Virus record (IMG/VR): IMGVR_UViG_3300025162_000016
Coordinates: 304,759 to 368,758 of that record
Reading direction: 5' to 3' (one strand)
DNA length: 64,000 nucleotides
Under the pieces are notes generated by a model, which saw only the letters and a program-made list of their open reading frames with translations, made no database searches and was not told the DNA's origin. Positions within the stretch are counted from its first letter, which is position 1. Each line of letters starts with the position of its first letter. Below, piece by piece: positions 1 to 45,817 of the stretch. The position numbers and the translations under genes are program-made.

Positions 1-361
1 GTATTTCACCAATTTATTTTTATAAAAATAAATATTAACTCTAAGAATGGTATTTCACCAATTTATTTTATAAAAATAATTATTAATTCTAAAAATGGTA
101 TTTCACCAATTTATTTTTATAAAATAAATATTAACTCTAAGAATGGGTATTTCACCAATTTATTTTTATAAAATAAATATTAACTCTAAGAATGGGTATT
201 TCACCAATTTATTTTTATAAAATAATTAATAACTCTAAGGTTAGAGTTATTTTTTTTTTTAATAAATCTAAGGTTAGAATTAATCGGTGAAAATACCACT
301 TGACGGGATAACTCTAAGGTTAGAGTTAATGAGAGGAATAAATCTAAGGTTAGAGTTGATC
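1..361. repeat. Tandem ~50-bp AT-rich repeats (GTATTTCACCAATTTATTTTTATAAAA..TAACTCTAAG) grading into palindromes
   Basis: About 5 near-identical units at 1-250, then 4 copies of TAA(C/A)TCTAAGGTTAGA(G/A)TT; runs off the left edge. Confidence 0.9.
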
Positions 362-1848: not shown

Positions 1849-1886
1849 AATTTGACAAAAACAAATAAATCGGTATAATTCTGATA

Positions 1887-2150
1887 ATGAGAAATAAAAC
1901 ATTATATGCAGTGATACATCGTCACGAGTATGGAGCCGGATTTTATCTTGTTCGGTGTGCTCATGTTCCTAAGAAAGAAGAAGTTATTCAACATCTTGAT
2001 ATTGATATTGCTGATACGTTGGACGAAGAAGAAATAATTATCGAAGAAATTATTTCAAAAGAAGCGGTAGAAATCCCTGAACCGGATGGCACTGAGGGAC
2101 AAGACCGAAAGAGCTATACCGATACACAAGACCGTAAAAATTATTACTGA
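1887..2150 (+). CDS. Hypothetical acidic protein (probably leaderless)
   Basis: ATG ~7 nt after TATAAT of a TTGACA/TATAAT promoter. Confidence 0.7.
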   Translation: MRNKTLYAVIHRHEYGAGFYLVRCAHVPKKEEVIQHLDIDIADTLDEEEIIIEEIISKEAVEIPEPDGTEGQDRKSYTDTQDRKNYY

Positions 2151-2324
2151 TTTCGCTTGACTTTTTTTGGTCAATCGGTATAGTGTTATCTGCTCTCTCT
2201 CGGTATAGTGCCGGGAGGGGCATTTTTTATTTATTCACCGGCAACAATTCTAAGGTTAGAGTTGATCAACTGTGGGGGGGGGATATGATTTCGTTTGACT
2301 TTTGCATGTTCTGGAATATGCAAT

Positions 2325-2440
2325 AGTGAAGTGCTGGAACAGACCAGACACTATATCACTAAAAAATGAAACTTTGTAGTTGATAATTTTGAATAAACCG
2401 GTATAATTTATTTAGTGAAGTGCTGGAACAGACCAGACAC
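2325..2440 (+). repeat. Two solitary CRISPR-repeat variants (AGTGA...TCACT form)
   Basis: 2325-2360 AGTGAAGTGCTGGAACAGACCAGACACTATATCACT and a partial copy at 2414-2440. Confidence 0.9.
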
Positions 2441-2536
2441 AATAAGACGTAAGACGAAACAAGTAATCATTGACAAAATAAAAAATATCGGTATAGTTAG
2501 TAAAGTTAAGCGATTAAACAAATAAAACAATAAAAA

Positions 2537-2989
2537 ATGAAAAAACAAAATACGGAAGTAGTTGTTGTGACGGAAACGGAAACGGTAACGGCGACAGAAG
2601 TTAAGCGTGGGCGTGGGCGGCCCAGGTTTGAAATTAAGAAGCCGGAGACAAATACGTGGACAATGAATGATGTTAAGGCATTGAACCCTGATGTTTGTGC
2701 ATTGAGTTTATATCAGCATAAGAATAGGTGGATTGCGGAAAATTGGTGTGTGGATAGTGGGGAGCGAATTCCTACGGGCGGGGTGGGAAAGCCATTGACT
2801 GTGTTTATTGCGGTTGCGGCATTGCAACGGTCTAAGGCGGCAAAGAAGGCTGCAAAGACTCGTAAGATGAACAGCAAGCTTCCGGTGGCCCCTCCGGTGG
2901 ATATGGTTGCGGTTCCGGTGACTGATACGGTTGCGGTGACTGATGCGGTTCCGGTGACTGATGCGGTGGAGAATCTGGTGACGGTATAA
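2537..2989 (+). CDS. Putative DNA-binding protein (AT-hook RGRGRPR plus wHTH-like segment)
   Basis: AT-hook motif; segment similar to C-terminus of 5396-6046; VPVTDA repeats. Confidence 0.6.
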   Translation: MKKQNTEVVVVTETETVTATEVKRGRGRPRFEIKKPETNTWTMNDVKALNPDVCALSLYQHKNRWIAENWCVDSGERIPTGGVGKPLTVFIAVAALQRSKAAKKAAKTRKMNSKLPVAPPVDMVAVPVTDTVAVTDAVPVTDAVENLVTV

Positions 2990-3074
2990 TGGTTTACAAT
3001 AAAGACGGCGAGAAAAGTAAAATATTCTTTCCGTCTTTTCTTGACTTTTTATATTATATTCATACACTATACCC

Positions 3075-3884
3075 ATGAATAAAACAAAATTAAGTTTCAC
3101 TCACGGCAATGCAAAGTTATCAAAAGACACTGCAATTCTTTCCCTTCCGGCAGGATATACATGTCCTTTTGCGAACGAGTGCCGGTCTTGTTCGGATAAA
3201 GTTACCGGCAAGATTAAAGATGGTCCACATACGCAATTCCGTTGTTATGCCACAACGGCAGAGTGTTTATTTCCTAACATACGGAGAAGTCGGTGGAATA
3301 ATTTTGAGCTTATTAAAAACGCTAAAACAACAATCGGTATGGCAAATTTGATTGAACAATCTTTGGAAGGGAAGAAAAAAATCAAATTGGTTAGATTTCA
3401 TCAAAGCGGCGATTTCTTTTCGCAAGCATATTTCGATGCTTGGCTTATGGTTGCTCAAAATCATTCTAATCTAATTTTCTATGGTTATACTAAGGCATTG
3501 CCTTATTGGGTAAAGCGATTAGAGGCAATTCCTGCTAATTTTAGGATTGTAGCCTCAAGGGGTGGGACGCATGACAATTTGATTGAAATGTTTGGGTTGC
3601 GGTCGGTGCGGGTTGTGTTATCTGAGCGAGAGGCACGCCGGAAATGGAAGCTTCAAATTGACCATGATGATTCGCATGTCTGGAATTATGACAAGGACTT
3701 TGCCATTGTCATACATGGCATCCAACCGGCGGGAACAAAGGCTAGTAAAGCATGGCAGAAAATTAAAACGCATGGCAAAGGTGGATATAAAGCCAAATAT
3801 TTTGGTGACAAGAAAGTTAAAAAGCAGAATAGTGCAGAAGGCTGGAAAGTTAAACGAGTTTTTGCCGATAAAATAGCGGCATAA
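3075..3884 (+). CDS. Gp88-like phage protein
   Basis: GNAKL, SLPAGYTCP..C, CYA, RFHQSGDF, FYGYTK motifs. Confidence 0.8.
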   Translation: MNKTKLSFTHGNAKLSKDTAILSLPAGYTCPFANECRSCSDKVTGKIKDGPHTQFRCYATTAECLFPNIRRSRWNNFELIKNAKTTIGMANLIEQSLEGKKKIKLVRFHQSGDFFSQAYFDAWLMVAQNHSNLIFYGYTKALPYWVKRLEAIPANFRIVASRGGTHDNLIEMFGLRSVRVVLSEREARRKWKLQIDHDDSHVWNYDKDFAIVIHGIQPAGTKASKAWQKIKTHGKGGYKAKYFGDKKVKKQNSAEGWKVKRVFADKIAA

Positions 3885-3935
3885 AAAACACTAAATACCG
3901 TTGACTTTAATCAAGTTAACGGTATTCTTTTATTT

Positions 3936-4124
3936 ATGAGAACAATACTTGGTCCCGGTGCAAAGTGCCGGGGATATGTTAAAGAGACTGCTAATGGTAA
4001 GGAATTGCTTTCTTCTGGCGGTACCTTACTGGGATACTATAATGAAGATACTGATCAAACACTTGAGCCAGGGGGAAACTTGTATTCCTATGGTGATTGT
4101 CTTATCGAATTGCTTGAAGATTAA
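3936..4124 (+). CDS. Hypothetical protein
   Basis: ORF directly after TTGACT/TATTCT promoter. Confidence 0.6.
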   Translation: MRTILGPGAKCRGYVKETANGKELLSSGGTLLGYYNEDTDQTLEPGGNLYSYGDCLIELLED

Positions 4125-4134
4125 TGTTAACACT

Positions 4135-4452
4135 ATGAACATGAATAATAGAGTTACCCTACAGCGAACAATATTTACTAATTGGAACACCCAAAATCAG
4201 ACTTACGGATACCGTGCGTATGATGATCAAGGGCAAACGTACGGGAATTGTTTTTCTCTTTTGCAAATGAATTTGCCGGATGATCAATTCTTTAGATTGG
4301 TTTATTCGCAGTGTGATGAAATGGTGGCGGCAATGGTAGATTCCTGTTATGAGAATGCGCTTGGAATTGAAATTGATGGGGACGATAAATCGTATGAATG
4401 GGTGAAAGAAACACTTGCAAAAGAGACAGAAATCAGTAATATGACGGTATAA
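4135..4452 (+). CDS. Hypothetical protein
   Basis: ATG at 4135 in frame with track ORF 3949-4452; follows the previous gene. Confidence 0.6.
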   Translation: MNMNNRVTLQRTIFTNWNTQNQTYGYRAYDDQGQTYGNCFSLLQMNLPDDQFFRLVYSQCDEMVAAMVDSCYENALGIEIDGDDKSYEWVKETLAKETEISNMTV

Positions 4453-4465
4453 GAATAATAAAAAC

Positions 4466-4771
4466 ATGAAAATTACATTGAATCAAGCATATCGGTTATT
4501 GGAAGATTGTTCGGCGGTTATTTGGGCGGATTATTTTCTTACATTCCCAGCATTGCAAGATGAGGATAATGAGCCAAAAATGTTTTTGTCCTTAGACTCT
4601 ACGGATGAACACGGGAAAGTGTTTCTGGTGGAATTCTATCGACAAGATAATCAAGAAGTTAAAGCGATTGGGAATTCTTTATTTCTCACGGATACAACGG
4701 GTGAAGAAATTCAACTAACATTATTGCATGCAATGAACACGGAAATTTATTTGGATGGAAAACCGGATTAA
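4466..4771 (+). CDS. Hypothetical protein
   Basis: ORF in operon order. Confidence 0.6.
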   Translation: MKITLNQAYRLLEDCSAVIWADYFLTFPALQDEDNEPKMFLSLDSTDEHGKVFLVEFYRQDNQEVKAIGNSLFLTDTTGEEIQLTLLHAMNTEIYLDGKPD

Positions 4772-4851
4772 TTAAATCTATTAGTTTCCCGTCTATAACA
4801 GGGCGGGGAACTAAGTCTTGACAAAACAGAAATGTAGTATATTATCCTAAT

Positions 4852-5064
4852 ATGATTATTAACAAAATTACCTATGGGTTTGTAGTTCAACAATGGGATA
4901 CAGAAAAAAAACAATGGGTTGGACAAGACTTTGTTGCCGGGGACGTGGTTGAATTTGAAGATGAAACGGGGGATATGATTGATGATGCGGAAATGGAAGA
5001 AATCGAGAGCAAGCCAGCATTATCATTTAAAATGGTTCAACCAGAAAACGAAGCAAAGGCTTGA
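4852..5064 (+). CDS. Hypothetical acidic protein
   Basis: ORF after TTGACA promoter. Confidence 0.65.
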   Translation: MIINKITYGFVVQQWDTEKKQWVGQDFVAGDVVEFEDETGDMIDDAEMEEIESKPALSFKMVQPENEAKA

Positions 5065-5136
5065 CAATTCCAACTAAAGCAGTATAATTTAAGTCGGTGG
5101 TTGCATGTTCTGGAATATGTGCTATATATGATAGAC

Positions 5137-5356
5137 AGTGAAGTGCTGGAACAGACCAGTTACTATATCACTTTATGTTGTTATCTTTTTTAAATTTATC
5201 CCTTGTGAATAAATCTAAGGTTAGAGTTAAAATAACTTGCATGTTTCGGGGATAAGTGCTATATATGATAGACAGTGAAGTGCTGGAACAGACCAGTCAC
5301 TAAAACACTGGGAATATGTGCTACTGTATGCGATAATGAAGTGCTGGAACAAACCG
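5137..5356 (+). repeat. Cluster of three solitary CRISPR-repeat variants
   Basis: 5137-5172, 5274-5309 and degenerate 5335-5356; first two preceded by TTGCATGTT..GTGCTATATATGATAGAC. Confidence 0.9.
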
Positions 5357-5395
5357 ACATTGAAAATAGTTGACTTTTGATGGTGTATCGGTATA

Positions 5396-6046
5396 ATGAG
5401 CAAGATGAAACAAATTGAAGTTGAATTCAAAACTAATGCCAATGGCACCGGGATGCAATTTTTCCGGCAAATTAAAAAAGGTTTTACCCCTAAAGGTAAA
5501 GCTGTATACATATATGAACGTATTCATGCGATTGGAGATAAAGAAGGGGAAACATTTGGATTTGAAGTTATTGCGCCTTCGATAAAGAAGGCAGGAACGT
5601 ATTCGTTACCTGGTGGCAAATCAATTACGTATGCTGAGGATTTTGAGGAATATCCTGGGGCGTCTAAGTTTGGAATATCAGCCTGGTCGTATCCCGCTTA
5701 TCAAGCTGGCGGGGCACGATGGAAATTTGAACAGCTTACAAAAGAACTAATAGAAATTGAAGAAATCGAAGAAACTAATAATATGATTGAAAACGATAAT
5801 GTAGATACAAATGAAGTGCCGTCTAATGTTACTAAGTCGAGGGGACGGCCCAAGAATGATCGTCCGTTGCTAAGTATTCCGTCGGGGGAGTTTAGTACAA
5901 CGGAGCTATGTAAACTAAACAATACTGATTATTCTGTGGCGGCAGTGTTTTTGAGGGACTGTGAAGCGGCTGGGACGGTAAAGCGAACCCGTACCGAGAG
6001 GCGTAATGCTAAGGGGAAGGAAACTCAATTGTTTCAAGTTGTGTAA
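5396..6046 (+). CDS. Hypothetical protein with C-terminal AT-hook (RGRPK) and wHTH-like domain
   Basis: 216-aa ORF after TTGACT/TATAAT promoter. Confidence 0.65.
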   Translation: MSKMKQIEVEFKTNANGTGMQFFRQIKKGFTPKGKAVYIYERIHAIGDKEGETFGFEVIAPSIKKAGTYSLPGGKSITYAEDFEEYPGASKFGISAWSYPAYQAGGARWKFEQLTKELIEIEEIEETNNMIENDNVDTNEVPSNVTKSRGRPKNDRPLLSIPSGEFSTTELCKLNNTDYSVAAVFLRDCEAAGTVKRTRTERRNAKGKETQLFQVV

Positions 6047-6048
6047 AT

Positions 6049-6372
6049 ATGAAATCGAATAAGCCTATCCCTGAAACATATACGAACCGTGTAGCTCAAT
6101 TTAACAAGACTGAGCAACGATTGCCTAATGTTCCTGTTAAAGGCAAGGAGCCGGGTTCTACGCTCACGGATACGACCAAAGAAAACCCTTATATGATTGC
6201 TCGTCTTAAAGTTCTTAATGACTATAAAGAGGGTAGGCGTATTGAAGTGTTGGCAATGGAAAGAGATAATAGAATTGATCACCGGCATTATGAGGAATTC
6301 GTTACCGATGTTCTTAGGGTAGCCGGGGATATTCCTTCTCTGGCTATCCGAAATCGAATCAAAGGAATCTAA
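6049..6372 (+). CDS. Hypothetical protein
   Basis: Coupled to previous gene; terminator at 6395-6424. Confidence 0.6.
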   Translation: MKSNKPIPETYTNRVAQFNKTEQRLPNVPVKGKEPGSTLTDTTKENPYMIARLKVLNDYKEGRRIEVLAMERDNRIDHRHYEEFVTDVLRVAGDIPSLAIRNRIKGI

Positions 6373-6431
6373 TCTAATCTAATCTAATCTACAAATCCCC
6401 TGTCAAGTGACGGGGGATTTTTTATATATTT

Positions 6432-7020
6432 AGTGAATTACTGGAACAGACCAGTCACTATCAACTCTAAGATTAGAATTAAAACGAATTGCATTTTTTT
6501 GAAATTTCTAGTGAATTACTGGAACAGACCAGTCACTAAAACACTACCGGAGAAGGAGTAATAATTTTTTATCACCCTTCTCCGGCATATATGTAGTGAC
6601 GTGCTGGGATATATCAGTCACTAAAACACTCAGACTGTACGGTAAAGGTATCAGCACTTTCCCAACTAAAATGATCTACGATTGCTTTACCGGCAGCATC
6701 ATCTTGATCAAATGCCAATTTGGGTTCAAAATCCGCTTGTTCCGCTTTATTCATAGCAAATTTATAATGATACCCATTATCGTAATCATCTTCGGTACAG
6801 ATTAATTTACAAAAGTAAAAGTCTGGTTCTCCATTACTGTTAATCCCGGCTACCATCATCTTTAAGTCAAGCATAAAGTCAAGCATATTTTTGTTTTTAA
6901 TCGGTTAATTGTTTTTTTACTGTGATATGATTATACGGATTTACGGATAGGAGTCAACTAATAAATGTATATATTTAGTGACGTGCTGGAACAGACCAGT
7001 CTCTATATCTCTATATCACT
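6432..7020 (+). repeat. Four degenerate solitary CRISPR-repeat variants
   Basis: Starts at 6432, 6510, 6595, 6977 (AGTGAATTACTGGAACAGACCAGTCACT / AGTGACGTGCTGG forms). Confidence 0.85.
6614..6886 (-). CDS. Hypothetical acidic protein
   Basis: 90-aa ORF; minus-strand TTGACT/TATAAT promoter at ~6930-6958. Confidence 0.6.
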   Translation of the reverse strand: MLDFMLDLKMMVAGINSNGEPDFYFCKLICTEDDYDNGYHYKFAMNKAEQADFEPKLAFDQDDAAGKAIVDHFSWESADTFTVQSECFSD

Positions 7021-7031
7021 AAATTACTAAA

Positions 7032-7217
7032 TTATTCTTCTTCTAATTTTTCTAGGCGATATTGGCGCAAAGCTTCATTGGTTTGCATTTCGTCTATAAT
7101 ATCGCATTCTTGGGGTTGAAATAATCCCATTATACCGACATTTTCGGCATCTATTGATCCGATGATTTCACCGAATTCATTAACTTCTACGTTTTTATTC
7201 TTTCTCGGTCTGCCCAT
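7032..7217 (-). CDS. Small protein with N-terminal AT-hook (GRPRK)
   Basis: 61-aa ORF with A-rich leader. Confidence 0.6.
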   Translation of the reverse strand: MGRPRKNKNVEVNEFGEIIGSIDAENVGIMGLFQPQECDIIDEMQTNEALRQYRLEKLEEE

Positions 7218-7531
7218 AATTTTGTTTTTGGTTTAATTGTTTTTCAACTATGATTTCACCAATTTATTGATTTCGGGATGAAAGTCAACAATTTTCTTCA
7301 ATTATTTTTCAGATTTCACCGATTTCACCGAATCTATTTTTTCCTATTTCACCGGCGATTTTCATTATACCGATTTTTTCAGAAAGTCAAGCTCCGGTTT
7401 TTATTAAATCTAAGGTTAGAATTGATCCCGTGGGGTGACTTCTAGTATGCCATAATGGCAGGAACCCGCTTTGCCGTGAAATAGTTTTGATATTTCGTTG
7501 ACTTTTTTTATGGTATCGGTATGATGGCGAC

Positions 7532-7858
7532 ATGATTAAAAACAATAAAAACCTTATCACGGTGGCCTTCAATCCAACTTGTTCGGTTGGACAAGATGGT
7601 GATTGGGCCGAGGGCAATAGCAAATTGGCGGCGATAGAACAGGCTTACGAAAACATATCGGGGACTCATGATTCAACCGAATCGCTTGCTAAGCTAAGCT
7701 ATGAAATTGTTAATCTTTGGGAATTACCGGATGTAAGTTATAATGCCTTTTCCCGTTTGCATGCACAATGGCGTCTTGCTCGTCATAATGGATGGACGAG
7801 CGATGAGGCCGATAAAATAATGATGGAAGAACTCGTTCGCCGGGAAGAAGAGGGTTGA
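7532..7858 (+). CDS. Hypothetical protein
   Basis: ATG just after TTGACT/TATGAT promoter. Confidence 0.6.
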   Translation: MIKNNKNLITVAFNPTCSVGQDGDWAEGNSKLAAIEQAYENISGTHDSTESLAKLSYEIVNLWELPDVSYNAFSRLHAQWRLARHNGWTSDEADKIMMEELVRREEEG

Positions 7859-7889
7859 CTTTGTTAAAACAATTCATATACTTTGAAAT

Positions 7890-8159
7890 ATGAAATTATT
7901 CACTGATATTGATGTTACGCCACACGGGGCAATTGTGGGTGCCGGTTCACTTTCGGTTAATCGATCGGAATTGATTACGGACATGCTACCTTGGCAAGAA
8001 CGGTGTTTACAGGAAACCGCTACTGGCTACGGTGCTAAATTGACTACAAGTCTTAAAATTAATTTTAATGGCAAGCTGTTTAGGATTTATAGCACTTGCT
8101 ATGGCAATGCCGGTTCATGTTGGTTCATTGCAAAGAAACGAAAAATATTTGTGTATTAA
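7890..8159 (+). CDS. Hypothetical phage protein
   Basis: TATGYGAKL..CYGNAGS; own promoter, duplicated at 8162-8205. Confidence 0.65.
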   Translation: MKLFTDIDVTPHGAIVGAGSLSVNRSELITDMLPWQERCLQETATGYGAKLTTSLKINFNGKLFRIYSTCYGNAGSCWFIAKKRKIFVY

Positions 8160-8473
8160 TGTTGACTTTGTTAAAACAGTTCATATACTTTGAAATATGA
8201 AATTCAACGTTAAGTACCGATCCAGCACTTCTTTTTTAGCACCAAAGGTTTACCGTGTTATAGTTGAAGCTGCCGACATGGAAACTTGTAAGACAGCAAT
8301 AAATTCATGGAGAGTGCGTGAACTTCGACTTGGTAATAAATTTACAATAATTTCCATCACGGAGACTTGACTTTGTTAAAACAATTCAAGCTGATTATCT
8401 TTCGGAAGTTAAATATTACCGTTGACATTCATTAAAAATCCGGTATGATTATAGATAGTTCTAATAAAACAAT

Positions 8474-8725
8474 ATGAAATATAGATTCACAATGCCGACA
8501 CAAGCACAATGTGATGCGTTATGTATTAAACGAGATGGATTGTATGGTCGTACTCAAATGTGGTTATTGGGAGCAGCAACGGCAGTATCTTGGGTAACTA
8601 AGATCAATTTGATGTTGTCTTTTCCGGGAAATTCATTTATCATGGAAACCAGTAGCGAAATCGTGGTAGATGGTATTACCGAACGATTAGAATCTTATGG
8701 GTTCATTCGGGAAGAAATGAAATAA
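8474..8725 (+). CDS. Hypothetical protein
   Basis: ORF after TTGACA/TATGAT promoter. Confidence 0.55.
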   Translation: MKYRFTMPTQAQCDALCIKRDGLYGRTQMWLLGAATAVSWVTKINLMLSFPGNSFIMETSSEIVVDGITERLESYGFIREEMK

Positions 8726-8730
8726 GAATT

Positions 8731-8985
8731 TGATTTCACCAATTTCCCAGTCGATTTCACCAATCGACTGGGAGACAGTTTTCTCCTTTTTTTCACCGCT
8801 CATTCAATATTCCGGTATTTCTCAAAAAAACAAGCAATTTTATTAACTCTAACCTTAGAGTTGATCGGCAAGTGTGGGAGAGACTGTGAGACTGTGAGAG
8901 TGGGAGAGAAATTGCCGGTGGCTAAAATAGAGTAAAATAAGTCTTGCAATACCGGGAATAATCCGTAGAATGTTGACAATGAAAC
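8731..8985 (+). promoter_or_regulatory. Repeated hairpin-palindrome-promoter cassette (copies at ~10061-10305 and ~10860-11056)
   Basis: Near-identical ~250-bp blocks ending TTGCAATACCGGGAATAATCCGTAGAATG upstream of unrelated genes. Confidence 0.85.
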
Positions 8986-9377
8986 GAATAACAATCAATC
9001 TTATACGTGCCGATGGCGAAGTCTTTTGGAAGGGTCAAACCGAATTCGGGAGCGTTGTCTTGTGTAAGTCCCCTATTGACAACATATTTCCTATTGCGTT
9101 GAATCTTAATTCATTGCAAATGGTTATATCTTCAAATGAACAGCCGGGGTTTTCTTTGATAAAACTATGTCAATCGGGTGGTTATTGGGCCTGGAACCTA
9201 TCCGGTATGGAACAACAACCGACTCTCTTAAACGGTCGCCTCTATTTCCCTTCAGCGCACTATTTTGGATTTGCGGAATCAACTATAGATGCGATTTTAC
9301 GAAGACTAATGGGCAAAGGAAAGAATTATTCTCTTTCCGGGAATCGTAAAGTGTGGATAAAATTCAATACTATTTGA
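8979..9377 (+). CDS. Hypothetical protein
   Basis: ATG 7 nt after TAGAAT -10 box. Confidence 0.55.
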   Translation: MKRITINLIRADGEVFWKGQTEFGSVVLCKSPIDNIFPIALNLNSLQMVISSNEQPGFSLIKLCQSGGYWAWNLSGMEQQPTLLNGRLYFPSAHYFGFAESTIDAILRRLMGKGKNYSLSGNRKVWIKFNTI

Positions 9378-9440
9378 CTTCCCGGCAATAACTCATATAC
9401 TACTCATAGTTAATTAAACAAATAAAGCTAAACAAATATT

Positions 9441-10013
9441 ATGGGCTGGACATTTACAAATAAAGGTTCACAGACAACCAAAGAATTCTTCGAGCGAGCA
9501 TTCAACTATGACAAGCCGGACGAGGGCCGAAGCGGTAATATCATCCGGTTTTCTTCTACGTGGACAACCGCTTATATTGCGTATGAAGTTAAAATTCCGG
9601 CAACGGCGGAATCGCCAGCCAAAAGAGATGTTATCGCAATTGTATGTTTGCTTCGCCATGTTCCTAATGCTAAAGACGGCTACACTTTTGGCTATAAGGA
9701 CATGACGGAAAATATGGGGCCATACGAAAGCAAGTGCCCGAAAACAATTTTGAATTTGCTTACCCCAACAACGAGCGAGTATGCTATTAATTGGCGTAAG
9801 CGGTGCTGGGATAGAATTAACAGGAAAGCTAATGCGCCTAAAGTGAAAGCCGGTGACTTGGTTAAATTTACTGAAATTATTTCTTTCCAACATGGAATAA
9901 AAACGGATTTCCTGACATGGGTTAAAGGTAGTACCTTTCGATATGGGTATAGCCTATGTCGAATTCCCAATTGGAAAGAACGGGAATATATTAACCTTGG
10001 CGCAATTGTTTAG
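9441..10013 (+). CDS. DUF6927-like protein
   Basis: MGW start, GYKDMTENMGP..CP..IL..L..A..WR.RC motif. Confidence 0.7.
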   Translation: MGWTFTNKGSQTTKEFFERAFNYDKPDEGRSGNIIRFSSTWTTAYIAYEVKIPATAESPAKRDVIAIVCLLRHVPNAKDGYTFGYKDMTENMGPYESKCPKTILNLLTPTTSEYAINWRKRCWDRINRKANAPKVKAGDLVKFTEIISFQHGIKTDFLTWVKGSTFRYGYSLCRIPNWKEREYINLGAIV

Positions 10014-10047
10014 TGAAGTGCTGGAACAGACCAGTTACTATATCACT
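10012..10047 (+). repeat. Solitary CRISPR repeat (AGTGA...TCACT form)
   Basis: Full 36-mer overlapping the TAG stop of 9441-10013. Confidence 0.9.
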
Positions 10048-10298
10048 CTATATCACTAGTGGATTTCACCAATTTCCCAGTCGATTTCACCAATCGACTG
10101 GGAGACATTTTTCTCCTTTTTTTCACCGCTCATTCAATATTCCGGTTTTTCAACAAATAGCAAGCAATTTTATTAACTCTAACCTTAGAGTTGATCGGCT
10201 ACTGTGAGAGACTGAGAGCGGGGGGGAAAGTTGTCGGTGCTGGAAAATAGAGTAAAATAAGTCTTGCAATACCGGGAATAATCCGTAGAATGTTGACA

Positions 10299-10637
10299 AT
10301 GAAAAAACAAATACTTCCTCGCACTGGAAATTATTACGGTATGTCCATTGTCCCGACGTATGGGACGGGCACAACTACATGGGTCGAAGGAGAAATGATG
10401 AACACTGATTACGGTCAATTCCGTAGAAGGGGGATAGTGATTCATGCGGGCACACAGGAACTTGTAATGGTAAGATTAGATGTTCCTGATACTTTTTTCA
10501 GTATCCCAGCCACCACAAGAGCAGAACATGGATATGTCACCACGAATGCGAAGGGTGAATTTGAATTCCGCCCGCATACTACCCAAACCGTTTCCCCAGC
10601 ACAATTTCGGAAAGATACTAAACACGCATACAAATAA
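10299..10637 (+). CDS. Hypothetical phage protein
   Basis: PDTFFSIPA motif; cassette promoter. Confidence 0.65.
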   Translation: MKKQILPRTGNYYGMSIVPTYGTGTTTWVEGEMMNTDYGQFRRRGIVIHAGTQELVMVRLDVPDTFFSIPATTRAEHGYVTTNAKGEFEFRPHTTQTVSPAQFRKDTKHAYK

Positions 10638-11074
10638 TATTTGACTTTCCAACAATAACCTATAGAATATCAACAATGAAACAAACATTTGAACAATGGC
10701 TGGATAGAGTAGATGCTGAAATTCAAGCGATAGCGGGAGTGTCTTTACTCGATCTTCCCGATTGTTGCTATCAAGATTGGTACAACGATGAAATATCAGT
10801 GAAAAGGGCAGCGAAAAAAGCGATTCGTACTGCCCAAGAATAAAACCTAGATAAAACAAATTTCCCGCTTGATTTCACCAGTCAAGTGGGAAACTCTTTT
10901 TTCCTCGTGTTCCAATCATTTCGGTTTTTCTCAAAAAAGCAAGCAATTTTATTAACTCTAACCTTAGAGTTGATCGGCTACTGTGAGAGAGAAATTGCCG
11001 GTGGCTAAAATAGAGTAAAATAAGTCTTGCAATACCGGGAATAATCCGTAGAATGTCCATAGTTAAATAAATAT

Positions 11075-18039: not shown

Positions 18040-18525
18040 ATGAAACACAAGAGAAATTTTTGTAAATGTGGAAAAGAAAAAGACATGCGGTCAGAATGGT
18101 GTCGTGATTGTTTTCTCTCTCTTTATAAAAACGGAGAAATTGAAATATTGACCGAAAAAACAAAAGAAGTTATGAGGCATAAACAAAGACATTTACCTCC
18201 ATTTCGTTCCTTATATAATTTTCTTTTAAATTCTCAAAAACATAGAAAGAAAAATATTATTGTAGATTTAACTTTTGATGAATTTCTCGAATTAACAAAA
18301 ATTTCCAATTGTCATTATTGTGGAGAATTAGTTAAATGGGAACCATATCGAAAGGTAGGTGCCACCTGTGCTTATAATTTAGATAGGAAAAATAATAAAA
18401 TTGGTTATACAAAAGATAATTGTGTGGTTTGTTGTAAAGGATGTAATATGTTAAAATCTTATTATGATGATAACGAATTCCTTTCACGAATACAAAAAAT
18501 ATCCAAAAATCTAAAACTATGTTGA
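18040..18525 (+). CDS. HNH endonuclease
   Basis: CHYCG..LDRKNNKIGYTKDNCVVCCKGCNMLK. Confidence 0.85.
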   Translation: MKHKRNFCKCGKEKDMRSEWCRDCFLSLYKNGEIEILTEKTKEVMRHKQRHLPPFRSLYNFLLNSQKHRKKNIIVDLTFDEFLELTKISNCHYCGELVKWEPYRKVGATCAYNLDRKNNKIGYTKDNCVVCCKGCNMLKSYYDDNEFLSRIQKISKNLKLC

Positions 18526-19664
18526 GTTATACGACCACACTTTTAGGAGATTGTCAAGAACTGAAAAAGTTACTTGAATACGAAAGGTTTGTATTCAACC
18601 TTGCTTCCAAGGAACAACTCCCAGAAACAAAGAACTCTCTTGTAGTTCTTCACTCCAAAGTGTATAAAAATGTTCGTAAGTCAAATCCAGAAATCCCATC
18701 CCAAGTAGTAATCAAAGCAGAACAAGAAGTCCTTGCTTCCTATCGTTCTACGAAATCCAATAAACATAAGAAAACTCTCATTGTAAAAAAGAACCTCTCA
18801 ATGAGGTTGGATAAACGATTGTATTCCATTCCCAATAAGTTTTCAATTCGTATAACAGGAGCAACGGAAGGACGAAAAGAATACAAGTTTGTTGTCTATC
18901 CACGACTCAAAGAGTTGATGGAAAAGTATCCATTCCAAGACCCACTTATTTACGAACATAATGGAAAGATTTGTATTGCTTTCTCCTTTGAGAATAAAGT
19001 TGAAAAAGTGAAACAAAGATTGGCATTAGGTGTTGATATTGGCATTCGTAGGAGTGCTGCTTGTTCGGATGGACGACTTATCATTGACAAAAAATTCAAT
19101 GGTGAGAAAAGAGGATTACGACATCTCAAAGATGACTTGAAATCCAAAGGCAGTAAGAGTGCTCGTAAGAAACTTCGTTATTCGTTGCGAAGAAAAGAAC
19201 GCAATAGGAATAAGAACCAAACCCATTTGATTGCCAATGCGGTTCTCTGCACAGACGCAGACACGATTTGTCTTGAAAACCTCAAGAGCATAAAAAGAAA
19301 AAAGAACAAATACCAAAACAAAAGAAGTATATCACAAGTTCCAATGTTTGAACTTCGTAGAGTAATAACCTATAAGGCACAGAACCAAGGAAAGACGGTT
19401 CTGCTTGTTTGCCCTTCTTTCACATCACAACGGGACTCGGTAACGGGTAAAGTTGAAGGTGAAAGAAGAGGTTGTAGATTTTATTCTAAGAATGGAATGA
19501 TATACGACTCGGACATAAATGCTGCCATTAACATTGGCAAAATGTCCAAACATCCCGTATCACAGACACAAAATCTGACTTATGGGCAGGCGTCAGTCAA
19601 TACGCCAAATGAATATAAGTCCCCGCTCATCGGGGCCGTTCAAGCACCTATCCCTTTAGGGTAG
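18519..19664 (+). CDS. tnpB: TnpB RNA-guided nuclease (Zn-finger-less variant)
   Basis: RuvC motifs LGVDIG, ICLENL, DSDINAAINI; 3' end overlaps the right-end hairpin. Confidence 0.9.
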   Translation: MLSYTTTLLGDCQELKKLLEYERFVFNLASKEQLPETKNSLVVLHSKVYKNVRKSNPEIPSQVVIKAEQEVLASYRSTKSNKHKKTLIVKKNLSMRLDKRLYSIPNKFSIRITGATEGRKEYKFVVYPRLKELMEKYPFQDPLIYEHNGKICIAFSFENKVEKVKQRLALGVDIGIRRSAACSDGRLIIDKKFNGEKRGLRHLKDDLKSKGSKSARKKLRYSLRRKERNRNKNQTHLIANAVLCTDADTICLENLKSIKRKKNKYQNKRSISQVPMFELRRVITYKAQNQGKTVLLVCPSFTSQRDSVTGKVEGERRGCRFYSKNGMIYDSDINAAINIGKMSKHPVSQTQNLTYGQASVNTPNEYKSPLIGAVQAPIPLG

Positions 19665-20135: not shown

Positions 20136-20526
20136 GGGCCTGAACTGGTATCGATCCAGATCATTGACAATTCGGAGCACGTAGAGGATGAGCGTTGGCC
20201 TCTTTAAGCATCGTTCAAAAAACCAAATGGCAAACTGAATAAGTTAGCTGGCCTTGAAGTTTCCTTAGTGGAAGACTCTGAGGCTGTGTTAGTCTGATTG
20301 ACTAATCCGTCATATTGTTTGACTCCTGCTAGAGCAAATGTGGCGTAAAACAGCAGGGCAACCGGTTGTAGTTGTAAATGCAACACTGATTAGCGGCTCT
20401 GTTAGTCGCATATACCTGACGCCAGTTTTTTTTATTTATAGTTAGGTGAATTGCAAAATAGGAATAAACGTGTAGTGCTGGGTTGGAGATTATTTGGAGA
20501 CCGGAGTTCGACTCTCCGCAGGTCCA
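20136..20526 (+). ncRNA. ssrA: tmRNA
   Basis: 5' GGGCCTG pairs with 3' CAGGTCC-A including G3.U; T-arm GGAG-TTCGACT-CTCC; tag ORF 20229-20297; promoter at 20086-20113. Confidence 0.9.
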
Positions 20527-20613
20527 GACCGTATATAAATTGACGCCTCCACGGGGCTACGGTTGGGTAATGCTAAGATCAATTGAGGAGACATGGATGT
20601 CTTCATGTACGAG

Positions 20614-21646: not shown

Positions 21647-21658
21647 TTGTTATCATTT

Positions 21659-23966: not shown

Positions 23967-25294
23967 AATTTTTGGAGGAAGGAAACCCCGACGGCTTTAG
24001 CCTCGGGGAGGAATTCCGACCATTCTTAACATTCTACACCAACCACCTCAATTTGTCAACCACAAAAATATTTTAACTTTTTCGATGTTTTTGATATTTT
24101 CATCACTATGTATTGTGTAGTAATGATAACATATAATACCAAACTGAAATTTGAGAAACAAGAAGATTTCAATAATCTCCTTGAATCTCTCAAATTAAAT
24201 CAATCGGCTTGGAATATCATAAGTCAAGAAAGATTTTCTATGACCGGTGGAATATTGAAAATTCTTCACGACAAATGTTATTATAAAGTTAAAAAAGCCC
24301 TGCCAACTATTCCATCGCAGTTTATCATTAAAGCGGAACAAGATGTCATTGCTACTTACAAAACAATTAAATCCAATAAACATAAACTTGATTCTCCCGC
24401 TACAAAAAAGAATTTATCCATTCAATTAGATAAAAGAATCTACAAGTGGATAGACAAAACACACTTAAAAATCACCACATTAAATAAACAAGCAATTGTG
24501 TCGTTTGATGTATATGAAAAGTTAAATGAATTAGATTTTTCCAAATTAAAAGACCCCAAATTATTTTTCAAAAATGGGAATTTCTATCTAAGTTTGATTT
24601 TCGATATTCAGCTTCCGTTTATTGATAATAATAAAATCGTAGGAATTGATGTAGGATTAAAAAGATTAATTTCCACGAGTGAAGGAAATATTGTTAAAGG
24701 CAATGAATTCAATGGGCATAAACGTAAAATTCGTTGGAATAAAAGAAAATTTCAATCTAAAAAGCACTCACATTCAGCGAGAACAAATCGTAAGAAACTC
24801 AGAAAAAAAGAAGCAAATTTTAGTAGAAATTATATACATAATGTTACTAAAAATGTAATTCTAAATACCAATGCAAATATTTTAGTGATAGAAGATTTAA
24901 GTAAAATTAAAAGTAAAAATAAAGGTAAACGATTCAATAATAGATTAAGTCAATTACCATTTTTCGCATTCAGAACTATATTAACATACAAGGCACAACT
25001 TTACGGAAAAAAAGTTGCAACAGTTAACCCCGCCTTTACAAGCCAAATAGATCATAGAGGTTTAGTTGGTGGAAAAAGAAGGGGATGTAGATATTATGGT
25101 TCGGACAATGTAGTATTAGATGCGGATGTAAATGCCGCAATCAATATTGCTAACAGATATGTAGACAATTTGAGTTTACATAAACACTCCGTTTTGTGTT
25201 GCAAAGCACTGGATGGACAGGCTGCGGTCAATCAGCCAATCGTCGGAAGTTCTTTCCGGCAAGCCCCTATCCCTTTAGGGTAGGGGTTGTTGAC
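23967..25294 (+). mobile_element. IS605/IS1341-type element (tnpB only)
   Basis: Left hairpin CCCCGA..TCGGGG, right hairpin CCCCTATCCCTTTAGGGTAGGGG-TTGTTGAC; TTCAT precedes the left end. Confidence 0.8.
24108..25283 (+). CDS. tnpB: TnpB RNA-guided nuclease (Zn-finger-less variant)
   Basis: VGIDVG, VIEDL, DADVNAAINI. Confidence 0.9.
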   Translation: MYCVVMITYNTKLKFEKQEDFNNLLESLKLNQSAWNIISQERFSMTGGILKILHDKCYYKVKKALPTIPSQFIIKAEQDVIATYKTIKSNKHKLDSPATKKNLSIQLDKRIYKWIDKTHLKITTLNKQAIVSFDVYEKLNELDFSKLKDPKLFFKNGNFYLSLIFDIQLPFIDNNKIVGIDVGLKRLISTSEGNIVKGNEFNGHKRKIRWNKRKFQSKKHSHSARTNRKKLRKKEANFSRNYIHNVTKNVILNTNANILVIEDLSKIKSKNKGKRFNNRLSQLPFFAFRTILTYKAQLYGKKVATVNPAFTSQIDHRGLVGGKRRGCRYYGSDNVVLDADVNAAINIANRYVDNLSLHKHSVLCCKALDGQAAVNQPIVGSSFRQAPIPLG

Positions 25295-25567: not shown

Positions 25568-25731
25568 CCAGTTCTAATAAAATAAACAGTTGTGCGTTGA
25601 TGAATAGAAATATTCCAGCACGGAGCTTATAGTCCCGAGTGTTTTGAAAACCTAAATTTAGTAAGAATAAATTTTAATAGAACAGGTAACTATATGGTGA
25701 AGTGCTGGAACAGACCAGTTACTATATCACC
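25568..25731 (+). ncRNA. Putative scaffold RNA copy A (internally shortened) fused to one CRISPR repeat (25696-25731)
   Basis: TTGACA/TATAGT promoter at 25536-25563; sequence shared with the 45.6, 56.8 and 63.7 kb copies. Confidence 0.6.
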
Positions 25732-26594: not shown

Positions 26595-26814
26595 ATTTTT
26601 GGATGTCTGATATGGATATGAGACTTTTATGTTAATTTGCGAGCGGTTAGGTGGTGTCAAATATGCCGTAGCCGCTCGCAACTTGTAACTCACTGATAAT
26701 GTGGAACTTACGAAATATGATATTTGATGTTGACAAATCGAGGATAATAGAATACACTACCGCTCGCAAATTGATACACAGTTCTTTGACAATACGATAG
26801 TTGCGAGAGACACA
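26595..26814 (+). promoter_or_regulatory. CRISPR leader 1
   Basis: TTGCGAGCGG..CCGCTCGCAA motifs, TTGACA/TAGAAT promoter; near-identical to leader 2. Confidence 0.85.
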
Positions 26815-27352
26815 GGTGAAGTGCTGGAACAGACCAGTTACTATATCACCGGTTGAACTCTGTCATATCTATGTCCACGTTAATCAGGTGAAGTGCTGGA
26901 ACAGACCAGTTACTATATCACCGATCTCTTCCGATGTTTGCTCAAGAGAAGCTTGTTTGGGTGAAGTGCTGGAACAGACCAGTTACTATATCACCTAGGG
27001 TTGCTATAAATGTAACAACCAAACTAGCAGATGGTGAAGTGCTGGAACAGACCAGTTACTATATCACCCAGTACTGGAGTACGGTTAAACCGGACACTAT
27101 ACCCGAGGTGAAGTGCTGGAACAGACCAGTTACTATATCACCAATAAACACTGTTCATCCGTTTCCGTTTCCGGTTTCGTTTGAAGGGTGAAGGTGAAGT
27201 GCTGGAACAGACCAGTTACTATATCACCCGAAAATGGAATATCTCTGCTATAGTTATGTTTGTAAGGTGAAGTGCTGGAACAGACCAGTTACTATAACAC
27301 CATCCTTGGACCAACCATCCAACCATCCAAACAGACCAGTTACTATATCACC
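26815..27352 (+). CRISPR. CRISPR array 1: 7 full repeats plus 1 partial
   Basis: Repeats start at 26815, 26887, 26960, 27033, 27107, 27193, 27266; spacers 36-38 nt (one 50 nt); degenerate distal end. Confidence 0.97.
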
Positions 27353-28305: not shown

Positions 28306-29152
28306 GGTGAAGTGCTGGAACAGACCAGTTACTATATCACCCAATGATCCAACCGCAAACTTTATAAACTGTTGTGTTGGGTGAAGTGCTGGAACAGACC
28401 AGTTACTATATCACCAATATTACTACGTCGTATTTATATATCGAATGATAATGTTGGTGAAGTGCTGGAACAGACCAGTTACTATATCACCCAAGTCTAT
28501 CCATGCAACCTAATACATATCGTTGTGAGGTGAAGTGCTGGAACAGACCAGTTACTATATCACCGGAGAGAGATAAACCTCTACATGGTATGGTTCGGCC
28601 AGTGTGGTGAAGTGCTGGAACAGACCAGTTACTATATCACCTTCCCATATTCTTCGGAGTTACTCGAATTATCCGAGGTGAAGTGCTGGAACAGACCAGT
28701 TACTATATCACCTGTATGTGGTAACTTTTGTTCCTATAGCATCAACAAGGTGAAGTGCTGGAACAGACCAGTTACTATATCACCGTCAACAGTTGACATA
28801 CCTTGAATTCCCGGCGCTGTTGGTGAAGTGCTGGAACAGACCAGTTACTATATCACCTAATGATCCAACCGCAAACTTTATAAACTGTTGTGTTGGGTGA
28901 AGTGCTGGAACAGACCAGTTACTATATCACCAATATTACTACGTCGTATTTATATATCGAATGATAATGTTGGTGAAGTGCTGGAACAGACCAGTTACTA
29001 TATCACCTAGCATACTGGTATGATAGGATCTAAGAAGTAATCTTGGTGAAGTGCTGGAACAGACCAGTTACTATATCACCGACCATCGAGGGGATAACCG
29101 ACACGATTGACCTTACGGCGAATTACTGGAACAGACCAGTCACTATATCGCC
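28306..29152 (+). CRISPR. CRISPR array 2: 12 repeats, 11 spacers
   Basis: 36-bp repeats, 35-41-nt spacers; terminal variant GGCGAATTACTGGAACAGACCAGTCACTATATCGCC. Confidence 0.98.
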
Positions 29153-45654: not shown

Positions 45655-45817
45655 TAAACATAGGTTAATTGACTAACAAAAAGATGAGAATAGAAATATT
45701 CCAGCACGGAGCTTATAGTCCCGAGTGTTTTAAAAACCTAAATTTAGTAAGAATAAATTTCAATAGAACAGGTAACTATATGGTGAAGTGCTGGAACAGA
45801 CCAGTTACTATATCACC
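45640..45817 (+). ncRNA. Putative scaffold RNA copy B (5'-truncated) fused to one CRISPR repeat (45782-45817)
   Basis: Near-identical to 63859-64000, followed by an exact 36-bp repeat. Confidence 0.6.

What the first reader, a model, noticed from the sequence alone, without database searches (positions are those of the whole stretch)
2303..10056. ~10 solitary CRISPR-repeat units in the early region with compensatory terminal changes (possible RNA anti-CRISPRs)
Seen: repeat variants at 2325, 2414, 5137, 5274, 5335, 6432, 6510, 6595, 6977 and 10012, 17-25 kb from the arrays. The full-length ones change both ends together (GGTGA..TCACC to AGTGA..TCACT), and most keep the CTGG-AACAGA-CCAG stem, which implies selection on pairing. 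The copies at 5137 and 5274 sit just behind a repeated TTGCAT..TATATAT promoter-like block. The DNA between copies is promoter or palindrome sequence, not spacers. Established: solitary repeat units in phages can act as Racr RNAs that titrate Cas proteins. Alternatives: RNA-processing sites that cut early transcripts, or operator sites.
Basis: partly seen in the sequence, partly recalled or inferred. Interest (0 to 1): 0.8.

Follow-up and report, generated by a model that had tools for sequence, protein, structure and literature searches.

The report
Stand-alone CRISPR repeats among phage early genes
A roughly 360-kb phage that carries its own Cas12-type CRISPR system has about ten stand-alone, slightly altered copies of its own CRISPR repeat among its early genes; they are real and fold like the repeat, but it is still open whether they work as decoy or regulatory RNAs or are decaying duplicates.

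Summary
Nine of the ten listed sites are highly significant matches to a sequence-and-structure model of the repeat, all on the + strand. The tenth (5335) is a truncated remnant. The hairpin, including the terminal stem, is supported by covariation across four related CRISPR systems.

The window is the end of a ~362-kb huge-phage genome. A cas3 gene, a 1003-aa Cas12-like gene and another array lie directly upstream of the window, 3.0–9.3 kb before the first unit. The units are therefore the phage's own repeat, and no bacterial species-representative genome carries it.

The early copies form a private subfamily (A1…U36). Several sit in a duplicated promoter-like cassette, and one starts exactly at a predicted transcription start.

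- Only 3–5 copies keep the conserved 3' box.
- Close strains (95–99% identical) show indels, gains and losses in the units.
- Phages with a homologous early region but no sign of this CRISPR system have none.
- No target was found for the sequences downstream of the units.

My best reading (confidence about 0.4) is early sense-strand hairpin RNAs that bind the phage-type Cas12-like effector. That works like a Racr, but it does not meet the Racr definition. Neutral decay inside recombining promoter cassettes is a serious rival.

The parts
2325..2360 (+). Solitary unit, intact hairpin, A1-U36 class, keeps the CTATATCA box
   Evidence: 4 mismatches to the array repeat. Model hit of 58.4 bits. Fold of -13.3 kcal/mol. 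Identical in strains L030 and L031.
2380..2407 (+). Sigma-70-like promoter (TTGATA-16-TATAAT) that places +1 at the first base of unit 2414
   Evidence: Matches 11 of 12 consensus positions. The unit starts 6 nt after the -10 hexamer. The 49-nt insert carrying this promoter is absent in strains L030 and L031.
2414..2449 (+). Solitary unit with a degenerate 3' end; the terminal stem is broken
   Evidence: 7 mismatches. Model hit of 29.5 bits. Only the inner stem folds.
5101..5136 (+). Promoter-like cassette (TTGCAT, 16 nt, TATATAT, gatagac) directly in front of unit 5137
   Evidence: Read from the sequence. The cassette recurs at 5238-5273, and in part before 2325, 5335 and L030:19108. It was not called by the strict promoter scan.
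5137..5172 (+). Solitary unit, intact; it differs from the array repeat only by G1>A and C36>T
   Evidence: Model hit of 58.9 bits. Fold of -11.3 kcal/mol.
5274..5309 (+). Solitary unit with the TCACTAAAACACT 3' variant, behind a second copy of the cassette (5238-5273)
   Evidence: 5 mismatches. Model hit of 57 bits. The only cassette-plus-unit at this position in strain L030 carries the TTACTATATCACT form.
5335..5366 (+). Truncated remnant (5' 23 nt only), 4 nt before the -35 hexamer of the promoter of the next gene
   Evidence: Marginal model hit of 9.3 bits. Alignment. Position 2 differs between strains.
6432..6467 (+). Solitary unit (AATTAC variant) with a degenerate 3' end, just after a terminator hairpin
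   Evidence: 9 mismatches. Model hit of 32.5 bits. Its 5' end is rearranged in L030 and L031.
6510..6545 (+). Solitary unit (AATTAC variant, TAAAACACT 3' end)
   Evidence: 7 mismatches. Model hit of 51.8 bits. Identical in the sister strains.
6595..6630 (+). Solitary unit with an altered loop (GATATA); it overlaps the 3' end of a - strand ORF
   Evidence: 10 mismatches. Model hit of 42 bits. G2>A without compensation in L030 and L031.
6977..7020 (+). Solitary unit with an 8-nt internal duplication, lying between - strand ORFs
   Evidence: Model hit of 44.4 bits. The duplication is absent in L030 and L031.
10012..10047 (+). Solitary unit, intact, A1-U36 class. It overlaps the stop codon of the DUF6927 gene and lies about 25 nt before a terminator hairpin.
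   Evidence: Model hit of 58.9 bits. Identical in the sister strains.
25696..25731 (+). Perfect solitary repeat (G1-C36 class) behind a conserved ~110-nt scaffold
45782..45817 (+). Perfect solitary repeat (G1-C36 class) behind the same scaffold
26815..27352 (+). Cognate CRISPR array A1 (8 repeats plus a degenerate end copy) with a conserved leader upstream
28306..29152 (+). Cognate CRISPR array A2 (11 repeats plus an end copy that carries the compensated GGCGA..TCGCC stem)

Best explanation
The units are solitary copies of the phage's own type V CRISPR repeat. They form a private subfamily that begins with A and, where intact, ends with U, so the first and last bases still pair.

They spread through the early region by duplication, partly as a promoter-like cassette followed by a unit.

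They are transcribed in the sense direction as hairpins in early RNAs, and at least one copy lies at the very 5' end of its RNA.

The most likely ligand is the 1003-aa Cas12-like effector encoded just upstream of the window. The intact copies (2325, 5137, 10012, perhaps 5274, 6510 and 6977) would occupy that effector with RNAs that carry no array spacer. This is a decoy-like (Racr-like) action, directed at the phage-family effector: the phage's own, or that of a co-infecting relative. The remaining copies are decaying.

Shown here: the units, their hairpin and its covariation, the cognate cas locus, the cassette, and the turnover between strains.

Inferred only: transcription, binding to the effector, and any effect on interference.
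For: 1. Real, strand-specific units. All 30 significant model hits in the window are on the + strand.

2. The hairpin is selected.
- On 18 family members from four lineages, 91% of cells pair.
- 8 of 12 pairs show changes on both sides.
- 0 of 500 shuffles reach this value, and slid controls pair at 19-49%.
- The terminal stem covaries at three pairs: 1-36 GC/AU, 2-35 GC/UA and 3-34 UA/CG.

3. In 5137 and 10012 the only two differences from the array repeat are the complementary end changes. By my own estimate, two random substitutions would hit one base pair and restore pairing in about 1% of cases.

4. G-U pairs (9-25, 13-20) exist only on the + strand reading. The sense strand of the intact units folds about 2 kcal/mol better than the antisense strand.

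5. The cognate effector is next door.
- cas3 and the Cas12-like gene lie directly upstream of the window, followed on the same strand by repeat copies.
- The gene pair is found with family repeats in each related lineage whose contig reaches a repeat (L041-L044).
- The RuvC residues are invariant.

6. The position fits an RNA 5' end.
- The strong promoter at 2380-2407 places +1 on the first base of unit 2414.
- About ten early genes in the region have the same 6-7 nt gap between the -10 hexamer and the A of ATG.
- A-first units cluster here, while G-first solos lie inside longer leaders or scaffolds.

7. Precedent. Solitary repeat units just downstream of promoters act as RNA anti-CRISPRs, including against a Cas12a system (PMC10651486). 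Single pseudo-repeat RNAs are loaded into Cas12a (10.1101/2024.10.29.618823).
Against: - Only 4 of 10 copies keep the CTATATCA box that is conserved in three of the four lineages' array repeats (the fourth has CTAAATCA). The 3' third, which in type V crRNAs lies next to the guide, is the least conserved part of the units.
- Between 95-99% identical strains the units change at least as fast as other intergenic DNA: 0.05-0.10 differences per aligned base against 0.04-0.05. The changes include uncompensated G2>A changes, an 8-nt indel, a rearranged 5' end, and copy gain and loss.
- Phages with homologous early regions (63-82% GP88 identity) have no units of any family type. In the stretches held for them, no cas gene of this system is visible either.
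- The TTGCAT..TATATAT cassette is not a canonical promoter by the scan.
- Units 6595 and 6977 lie in a block of - strand genes.
- It is not obvious what a phage gains by titrating its own effector.
- No expression or binding data exist.
Confidence: 0.4

Rival explanations
1. By-products of recombination. The units are decaying copies of the repeat that hitch-hike in duplicated promoter and stem-loop cassettes of a fast-changing early region, much like the PeSL cassettes of T4-type phages. Any role is generic (homology for module shuffling) and does not involve a Cas protein.
For: - The cassette plus unit is repeated at 2325, 5137, 5274, 5335 and L030:19108.
- Differences between close strains sit at the cassettes and units: a 49-nt promoter insert, a 137-bp duplication, a 3'-end swap, and an extra copy.
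- The units are not better conserved than the intergenic background.
- About half the copies are degenerate.
- Relatives that show no sign of this CRISPR system lack units altogether.
- PeSL precedent: PMC2839356 and PMC4122927.
Against: - The complementary A1/U36 change, and a perfect inner stem-loop in 8 of 10 copies, argue that pairing was selected at least when the subfamily arose.
- In PeSLs the stem-loop precedes the promoter, whereas several units here follow it.
Confidence: 0.3
2. Cas-independent cis elements. The unit would be a 5'-terminal or intergenic RNA hairpin that stabilises or insulates early transcripts. It would be derived from the repeat only by descent.
For: - The hairpin pairs from its first to its last base.
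- It starts at the predicted +1 for unit 2414.
- Unit 10012 sits in a 3' UTR just before a terminator.
- From established knowledge: a fully paired 5'-terminal stem-loop protects mRNA from 5'-end-dependent decay in E. coli.
Against: - The loop AACAGA and the GAAG box, conserved across lineages and not needed for a plain hairpin, are kept in most units.
- Most units lack a U-tract, so they are not intrinsic terminators.
Confidence: 0.15
3. Guide-bearing regulators (crRNA-like RNAs of the CreR/Cracr kind). Each unit plus the 10-20 nt that follow would direct the effector to a partly matching promoter to repress it.
For: - Type V crRNAs have the repeat 5' of the guide, so a single repeat is enough (10.1101/2024.10.29.618823).
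- The relative L043 has a two-repeat mini-array in the 5' UTR of its cas12-like gene.
- Units 6510 and 10012 are followed by hairpins.
Against: - No 10-nt seed of any downstream sequence matches elsewhere more often than chance in about 106 kb of this genome: 25 hits against a control mean of 63, and no shared flanking motif.
- The cas3/cas12 intergenic region gives only two chance-level 7-8 nt seed matches, both from the A-rich seed of unit 2325.
- The PAM is unknown, because no protospacer was found.
Confidence: 0.1
4. Racr in the strict published sense: decoys that mimic the repeat of a host CRISPR-Cas system and block host immunity.
For: Solitary repeat units behind promoter-like sequence in a virus, placed for early expression (PMC10651486).
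Against: - A scan of one genome per bacterial and archaeal species found only three single chance matches and no array.
- The cognate arrays and cas genes are on the phage itself.
- The host is unknown.
Confidence: 0.07

Closest known systems
Solitary repeat units (SRUs) and RNA anti-CRISPRs (Racr), Camara-Wilpert et al. 2023 (PMC10651486)
   Same: Stand-alone CRISPR-repeat copies in a viral genome. They are intergenic, often directly behind a promoter-like sequence, and keep the repeat hairpin. A decoy action on a Cas12 effector has a precedent.
   Different: - The repeat belongs to the phage's own CRISPR-Cas system, not to a known host system.
- cas genes are on the same element.
- There are about ten clustered copies, several within 100 bp of each other.
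- Half of them are degenerate.
- No acr neighbours can be recognised.
- Function is untested.
crRNA-like regulatory RNAs (CreR/CreA; viral Cracr), 10.1101/2023.03.10.532045, PMC10120712, 10.1101/2024.10.29.618823
   Same: Degenerate single repeats or mini-arrays derived from the cognate repeat. The type V version is one pseudo-repeat, a short guide and a terminator.
   Different: No partial target was found for any downstream sequence. Most units are kilobases away from the cas genes.
PeSL mobile promoter/stem-loop cassettes of T4-type phages (PMC2839356, PMC4122927)
   Same: A repeated composite of an early promoter and a stem-loop between small ORFs in a plastic region. Differences between close strains fall at the cassettes.
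   Different: The stem-loop here is a recognisable CRISPR repeat with family-specific conserved loop and boxes. The order is often promoter first, then hairpin.
CRISPR systems of huge phages (Al-Shayeb et al. 2020, PMC7162821)
   Same: A huge phage with compact arrays, no visible adaptation genes, a type V effector, and a tmRNA.
   Different: The effector is a divergent 1003-aa Cas12 paired with Cas3. More than 20 solitary repeats are scattered over the roughly 106 kb of the genome that could be read here.

Membership tests
Racr / SRU | CRISPR-repeat-like unit in a mobile element, outside any repeat-spacer array | tested here: met
   Nine significant model hits lie between 2325 and 10047. There is no 72-76 nt periodicity and no spacers.
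Racr / SRU | Truly solitary: no other full or partial repeat within 100 bp (SRUFinder rule, PMC10651486) | tested here: not met
   Start-to-start spacings are 89 nt (2325/2414), 61 nt (5274/5335) and 78 and 85 nt (6432/6510/6595). Only 6977 and 10012, and marginally 5137, are isolated.
Racr / SRU | Immediately downstream of a promoter | tested here: inconclusive
   Clear for 2414, where an 11/12 promoter ends 6 nt before the unit. The cassette before 2325, 5137, 5274 and 5335 is promoter-like but was not called by the scan. Units 6595, 6977 and 10012 have no adjacent promoter.
Racr / SRU | Repeat matches the CRISPR-Cas system of the host | tested here: not met
   The scan of genome contigs gave three single chance matches and no array. 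Only one genome per species was searched, and the host is unknown.
Racr / SRU | Not associated with cas genes on the element | tested here: not met
   cas3 and a Cas12-like gene lie 3.0-9.3 kb upstream of the first unit, and at least four arrays are on the same genome.
Racr / SRU | Expressed as a small RNA that binds Cas proteins and lowers interference | not testable with these tools
   No expression or biochemical data are available.
crRNA-like regulators (CreR/CreA/Cracr) | Downstream pseudo-spacer with at least 9-10 PAM-proximal matches to a cas or toxin promoter | tested here: not met
   No excess of 10-nt seed matches in about 106 kb of the phage. The cas3/cas12 intergenic region gives only two chance-level 7-8 nt seed matches. 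About 70% of the genome and the host were not available.
crRNA-like regulators (CreR/CreA/Cracr) | Pseudo-repeat keeps the part of the repeat that binds the effector | tested here: inconclusive
   The inner stem-loop is exact in 8 of 10 units. The 3' box CTATATCA is kept in only 4 of 10. Which part the effector reads is unknown.
CRISPR array | Regular alternation of repeats and unique spacers of 30-40 nt | tested here: not met
   Spacings range from 61 to 3035 nt. The DNA between units holds promoters, terminators and ORFs.
Repeat family of the Cas12-like + Cas3 system | Match to the sequence-and-structure model built from four lineages | tested here: met
   29.5-58.9 bits for nine units. Five of these units were among the model's 18 training sequences, so their scores are partly circular; units 2414, 6432, 6977 and 10012 were not in the training set. 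No hits were found in phages with homologous early regions that show no sign of the system.
PeSL-like mobile regulatory cassettes | Repeated promoter plus stem-loop composite, with strain differences falling at the cassettes | tested here: met
   The cassette recurs five times. Indels, a duplication and a gained copy lie at the cassettes. The order of the elements differs from classical PeSLs.

The most novel reading that the evidence does not exclude
The A-first, U-last units are a dedicated class of primary-transcript 5' hairpins made from the phage's own CRISPR repeat. Early in infection they would load or titrate the Cas12-like/Cas3 machinery. That would make them either an RNA anti-CRISPR used in conflicts between sibling huge phages that share this effector family, or a built-in timer that holds back the phage's own nuclease.
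Probability: 0.2. Interest if true: 0.8.

Novelty: new variant of a known kind. Interest (0 to 1): 0.5.

Why it matters
Solitary repeat units are known as viral decoys against host CRISPR systems. Here the same kind of element belongs to a CRISPR system that the virus itself carries, and it has multiplied inside the early region.

If the units bind the phage effector, RNA mimicry of repeats would extend to two new settings: conflicts between phages, and self-regulation of virus-encoded nucleases. It would also give a natural set of repeat variants for mapping what a new Cas12 family recognises in its guide RNA.

If they turn out to be decaying copies, they show how CRISPR repeats seed recombination and regulatory cassettes in huge-phage genomes.

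Tried and rejected
- **Host arrays.** A 19-base core of the repeat was scanned against one genome per bacterial and archaeal species. It gave only three single chance matches.
- **Known phages.** There is no nucleotide match for the early region. No protospacer for the arrays was found in the GenBank phage collection.
- **Spacer targets.** 59 spacers from five arrays of three phage lineages, plus one mini-array spacer from sister strain L030, matched only themselves among all fetched loci. The PAM therefore stays unknown.
- **Guide hypothesis.** Seed searches with the sequences downstream of 20 solitary copies gave nothing above chance. The cas3/cas12 promoter region gave only two chance-level 7-8 nt matches, and the L043 mini-array spacer gave none.
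- **Co-variation of solos with arrays in other lineages.** Degenerate family patterns were scanned in the viral and metagenome collections. These found arrays of one relative and only chance singles otherwise. The L044-type core is absent from the viral collection. The relatives' contigs are too short to show their early regions.
- **Relatives of the Cas12f-like gene** (33-59% identity) have no arrays or family repeats within 10 kb.
- **Relatives of the early-region proteins** (GP88 at 63-82% identity, the 213-aa ORF at 56-58%) have promoters and palindromic sites but no units.
- **Neighbouring ORFs** give no Pfam or PHROG function and no sign of acr or aca genes.
- **Rfam** has no family for the unit.
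- **Terminator reading rejected.** Most units lack a U-tract.

Full report
**What the window is.**
The window matches the last 64 kb of a 368,758-bp viral contig at 100% identity. The two ends of that contig overlap: the window's last 5.4 kb is shown directly to be identical to the contig's start, and the coordinates imply an overlap of about 7.1 kb. The genome is therefore probably circular and about 362 kb. It has no relative in the GenBank phage collection. It carries a tmRNA. It has two CRISPR arrays with a 36-nt repeat at 26815-27352 and 28306-29152.

**Check of the observation.**
- All ten listed sites exist, on the + strand, with 2 to 10 mismatches to the array repeat. Shuffled sequence gives 0-1 hits per strand even at 14 mismatches.
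- I built a covariance model from 18 family members and ran it over the window with filters off.
- It returns 30 significant hits, all on the + strand. Nine early units have E between 1e-12 and 5e-5.
- The copy at 5335 is a 5' fragment with a marginal score.
- The core CTGGAACAGACCAG is exact in 8 of 10.
- All ten begin with A instead of G.
- Units 2325, 5137 and 10012 also end with T instead of C and keep a fully paired terminal stem.
- Units 5274, 6510 and 6595 keep four of five terminal pairs.
- Units 2414 and 6432 have lost the stem.
- The block in front of 5137 and 5274 is repeated as described.

**The hairpin is real and selected.**
The Cas12-like gene described below has relatives in four other contigs whose arrays carry related but different repeats.
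- Across these lineages and the solitary copies, 91% of cells pair.
- 8 of 12 pairs show changes on both sides.
- No shuffle out of 500 reaches the observed covariation, and sliding the partners drops pairing to 19-49%.
- The terminal stem alone shows three independent compensated pairs: 1-36 GC/AU in the early units; 2-35 GC/UA between lineages; 3-34 UA/CG in the last repeat of array A2 at 29117.
- In 5137 and 10012 the two complementary end changes are the only differences from the array repeat. By my own estimate this is a roughly 1% event for two random substitutions.
- The G-U pairs read as pairs only on the + strand. The sense strand of intact units folds about 2 kcal/mol better than the antisense strand, which is a weak point in favour of RNA.

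Directly upstream of the window, the same genome carries:
- a further array on the opposite strand;
- a cas3 gene with HD and helicase domains, 758 aa;
- a divergently transcribed 1003-aa protein whose C-terminal part matches Cas12X/Cas12j-type structures (profile E of 5e-24) and has invariant RuvC residues;
- right after its stop codon and on the same strand, a degenerate repeat, a perfect repeat and a 3-mismatch repeat.

The cas3/Cas12-like pair is found in every relative examined, with family repeats wherever the contig reaches them. This effector is therefore the probable user of the repeat.

The early units are the phage's own repeat. The first lies 3.0 kb from the end of the Cas12-like gene and about 8.7 kb from the nearest array, not 17-25 kb away.

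More solitary copies exist: perfect ones at 25696 and 45782, and others outside the window. The genome holds more than 20 solitary copies in the roughly 106 kb I could read. No bacterial or archaeal species-representative genome has an array with this repeat.

**Anatomy of the early units.**
- They fall into a subfamily defined by A1.
- The 5' 23 nt are nearly invariant. The 3' 13 nt vary: CTATATCACT in 2325, 5137 and 10012, and in 6977 with an 8-nt duplication; TAAAACACT in 5274, 6510 and 6595; unrelated sequence in 2414, 6432 and 5335.
- The box CTATATCA is conserved in three of the four lineages' array repeats.
- Five copies (2325, 5137, 5274, 5335 and an extra one in a sister strain) follow a shared cassette of TTGCAT, 16-17 nt, a TATATAT or TACTGT element, and 7-8 nt. 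This cassette fails the strict -10 rule of the scan.
- Unit 2414 starts 6 nt after the -10 of an 11/12 promoter.
- About ten early genes in the region have their ATG 6-7 nt after a -10 hexamer. Transcripts here appear to start at that A.
- The A-first units fit that design, which may explain the G1>A change and the compensating C36>U. The G-first solos lie inside longer leaders or scaffolds.
- Unit 10012 overlaps a stop codon and precedes a terminator. Units 6595 and 6977 lie among - strand genes.

**Conservation.**
- Two sister strains (95-99% nucleotide identity) keep most units.
- They lack the 49-nt promoter between 2325 and 2414.
- They have one cassette-plus-unit where the window has two.
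- They carry the other 3' form at that copy.
- They have a rearranged 5' end at 6432.
- They have an uncompensated G2>A at 6595.
- They lack the 8-nt duplication at 6977.
- They hold an extra cassette-plus-unit that the window lacks.
- Per aligned base, the units differ at least as much as other intergenic DNA.
- Phages with homologous early regions but more distant proteins have dense promoters and palindromic sites. They have no hit to the family model, and they show no cas genes of this system in the stretches held.
- I could not test whether lineages with a different repeat have solitary copies of their own repeat. Their contigs are short, and pattern scans of the viral and metagenome collections found none.

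**Tests of specific mechanisms.**
- The sequences that follow the units have no seed matches above chance elsewhere in the readable part of the genome. The cas3/cas12 intergenic region gave only two chance-level 7-8 nt matches.
- Array spacers match nothing available, so the PAM is unknown.
- Neighbouring ORFs have no recognisable function.
- Most units lack a U-tract and are not terminators.

**Interpretation.**
The units meet the descriptive definition of solitary repeat units. They fail three defining features of published Racrs: a host cognate system, absence of cas genes on the element, and true solitude within 100 bp (PMC10651486).
- **Best-supported mechanism (about 0.4).** The intact copies are made early as sense hairpin RNAs and are bound by the phage-family Cas12-like effector, which they occupy without providing an array spacer. 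This works like a Racr, but the target would be the phage's own effector or that of a co-infecting relative.
- **Main rival (about 0.3).** The units are decaying passengers of recombining promoter cassettes, comparable to PeSLs (PMC2839356, PMC4122927).
- **Less likely.** A Cas-independent hairpin role (about 0.15), guide-bearing regulators (about 0.1; 10.1101/2024.10.29.618823) and strict anti-host Racrs (about 0.07).

**Verdict.**
This is a real feature and a new variant of a known kind. Its function is unproven. Interest is moderate (0.5).

Noticed in passing
L026 692-6096 (just upstream of window position 1): A cas3 gene (HD plus helicase, 758 aa) is transcribed divergently from a 1003-aa Cas12-like gene with intact RuvC residues. 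The nearest solved structures are Cas12X/Cas12j19. The gene pair recurs in four other contigs (45-58% identity). A type V effector that is consistently paired with Cas3 may deserve its own study.
   Followed up: partly
window 25585-25731, 45671-45817; L013 11200-11377: Three near-perfect solitary repeats each sit behind a non-coding stretch carrying the motif GGAGCTTAKAGTCCC, which is also found at the 3' end of the Cas12f/TnpB-like genes. In the two window copies the stretch is a shared ~110-nt scaffold that also holds a 9-nt anti-repeat (TTCCAGCAC). It looks like a natural scaffold-plus-repeat guide RNA, or like a TnpB-type element end abutting repeats.
   Followed up: partly
window 18519-19664, 24108-25283, 48243-49493: Three compact TnpB/Cas12f-like ORFs (381, 391 and 416 aa) from two families. 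A fourth paralogue lies just beyond the window end.
   Followed up: partly
window 32365-45215: About 13 kb holding some fifty tandem small ORFs built from 12-nt units. These encode tetrapeptide repeats of the form S-Q-V-x.
   Followed up: no
window 20136-20529 and 56001-56071: A full-length tmRNA (Rfam, 93.8 bits). A tRNA-like hit is seen by Rfam but not by ARAGORN.
   Followed up: no
window 1852-10680 (for example ATG at 1887, 3075, 4852, 5405, 7532, 7890, 8979, 10299): About ten early genes have their ATG 6-7 nt after a strong -10 hexamer. This suggests leaderless early mRNAs.
   Followed up: partly
window 1-360, 7250-7350, 8732-8984, 10062-10304, 10856-11056: A 49-bp tandem repeat (4.9 copies) carries ATTTCACCAAT and TAACTCTAAG motifs. 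The first motif recurs in terminator loops. The palindrome TAACTCTAACCTTAGAGTT recurs more than ten times in ~250-bp repeated intergenic modules. These are probably protein-binding sites of the early region.
   Followed up: no
window 26639-26814 and 28130-28305; L042, L044, L047: A ~190-nt array leader is conserved across lineages. It has a hairpin (GCGAGCGG..CCGCTCGC), a promoter and a CCGCTCGCAAA box. In L044 and L047 the leader is followed by a single repeat only.
   Followed up: partly
L043 5029-5136: Two variant repeats with one 36-nt spacer lie in the 5' UTR of the cas12-like gene of a relative (true start codon at 5171). This is the layout of an autoregulatory mini-array.
   Followed up: partly
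window 28342-28455 and 28858-28971: Array A2 contains an internal duplication of two spacers with their repeats.
   Followed up: no
window 57639-59357; 21647-23941 and 49771-51870: A papain-like protease ORF is interrupted by an intein with an HNH domain. Two large ORFs carry 30-aa tandem repeats.
   Followed up: no
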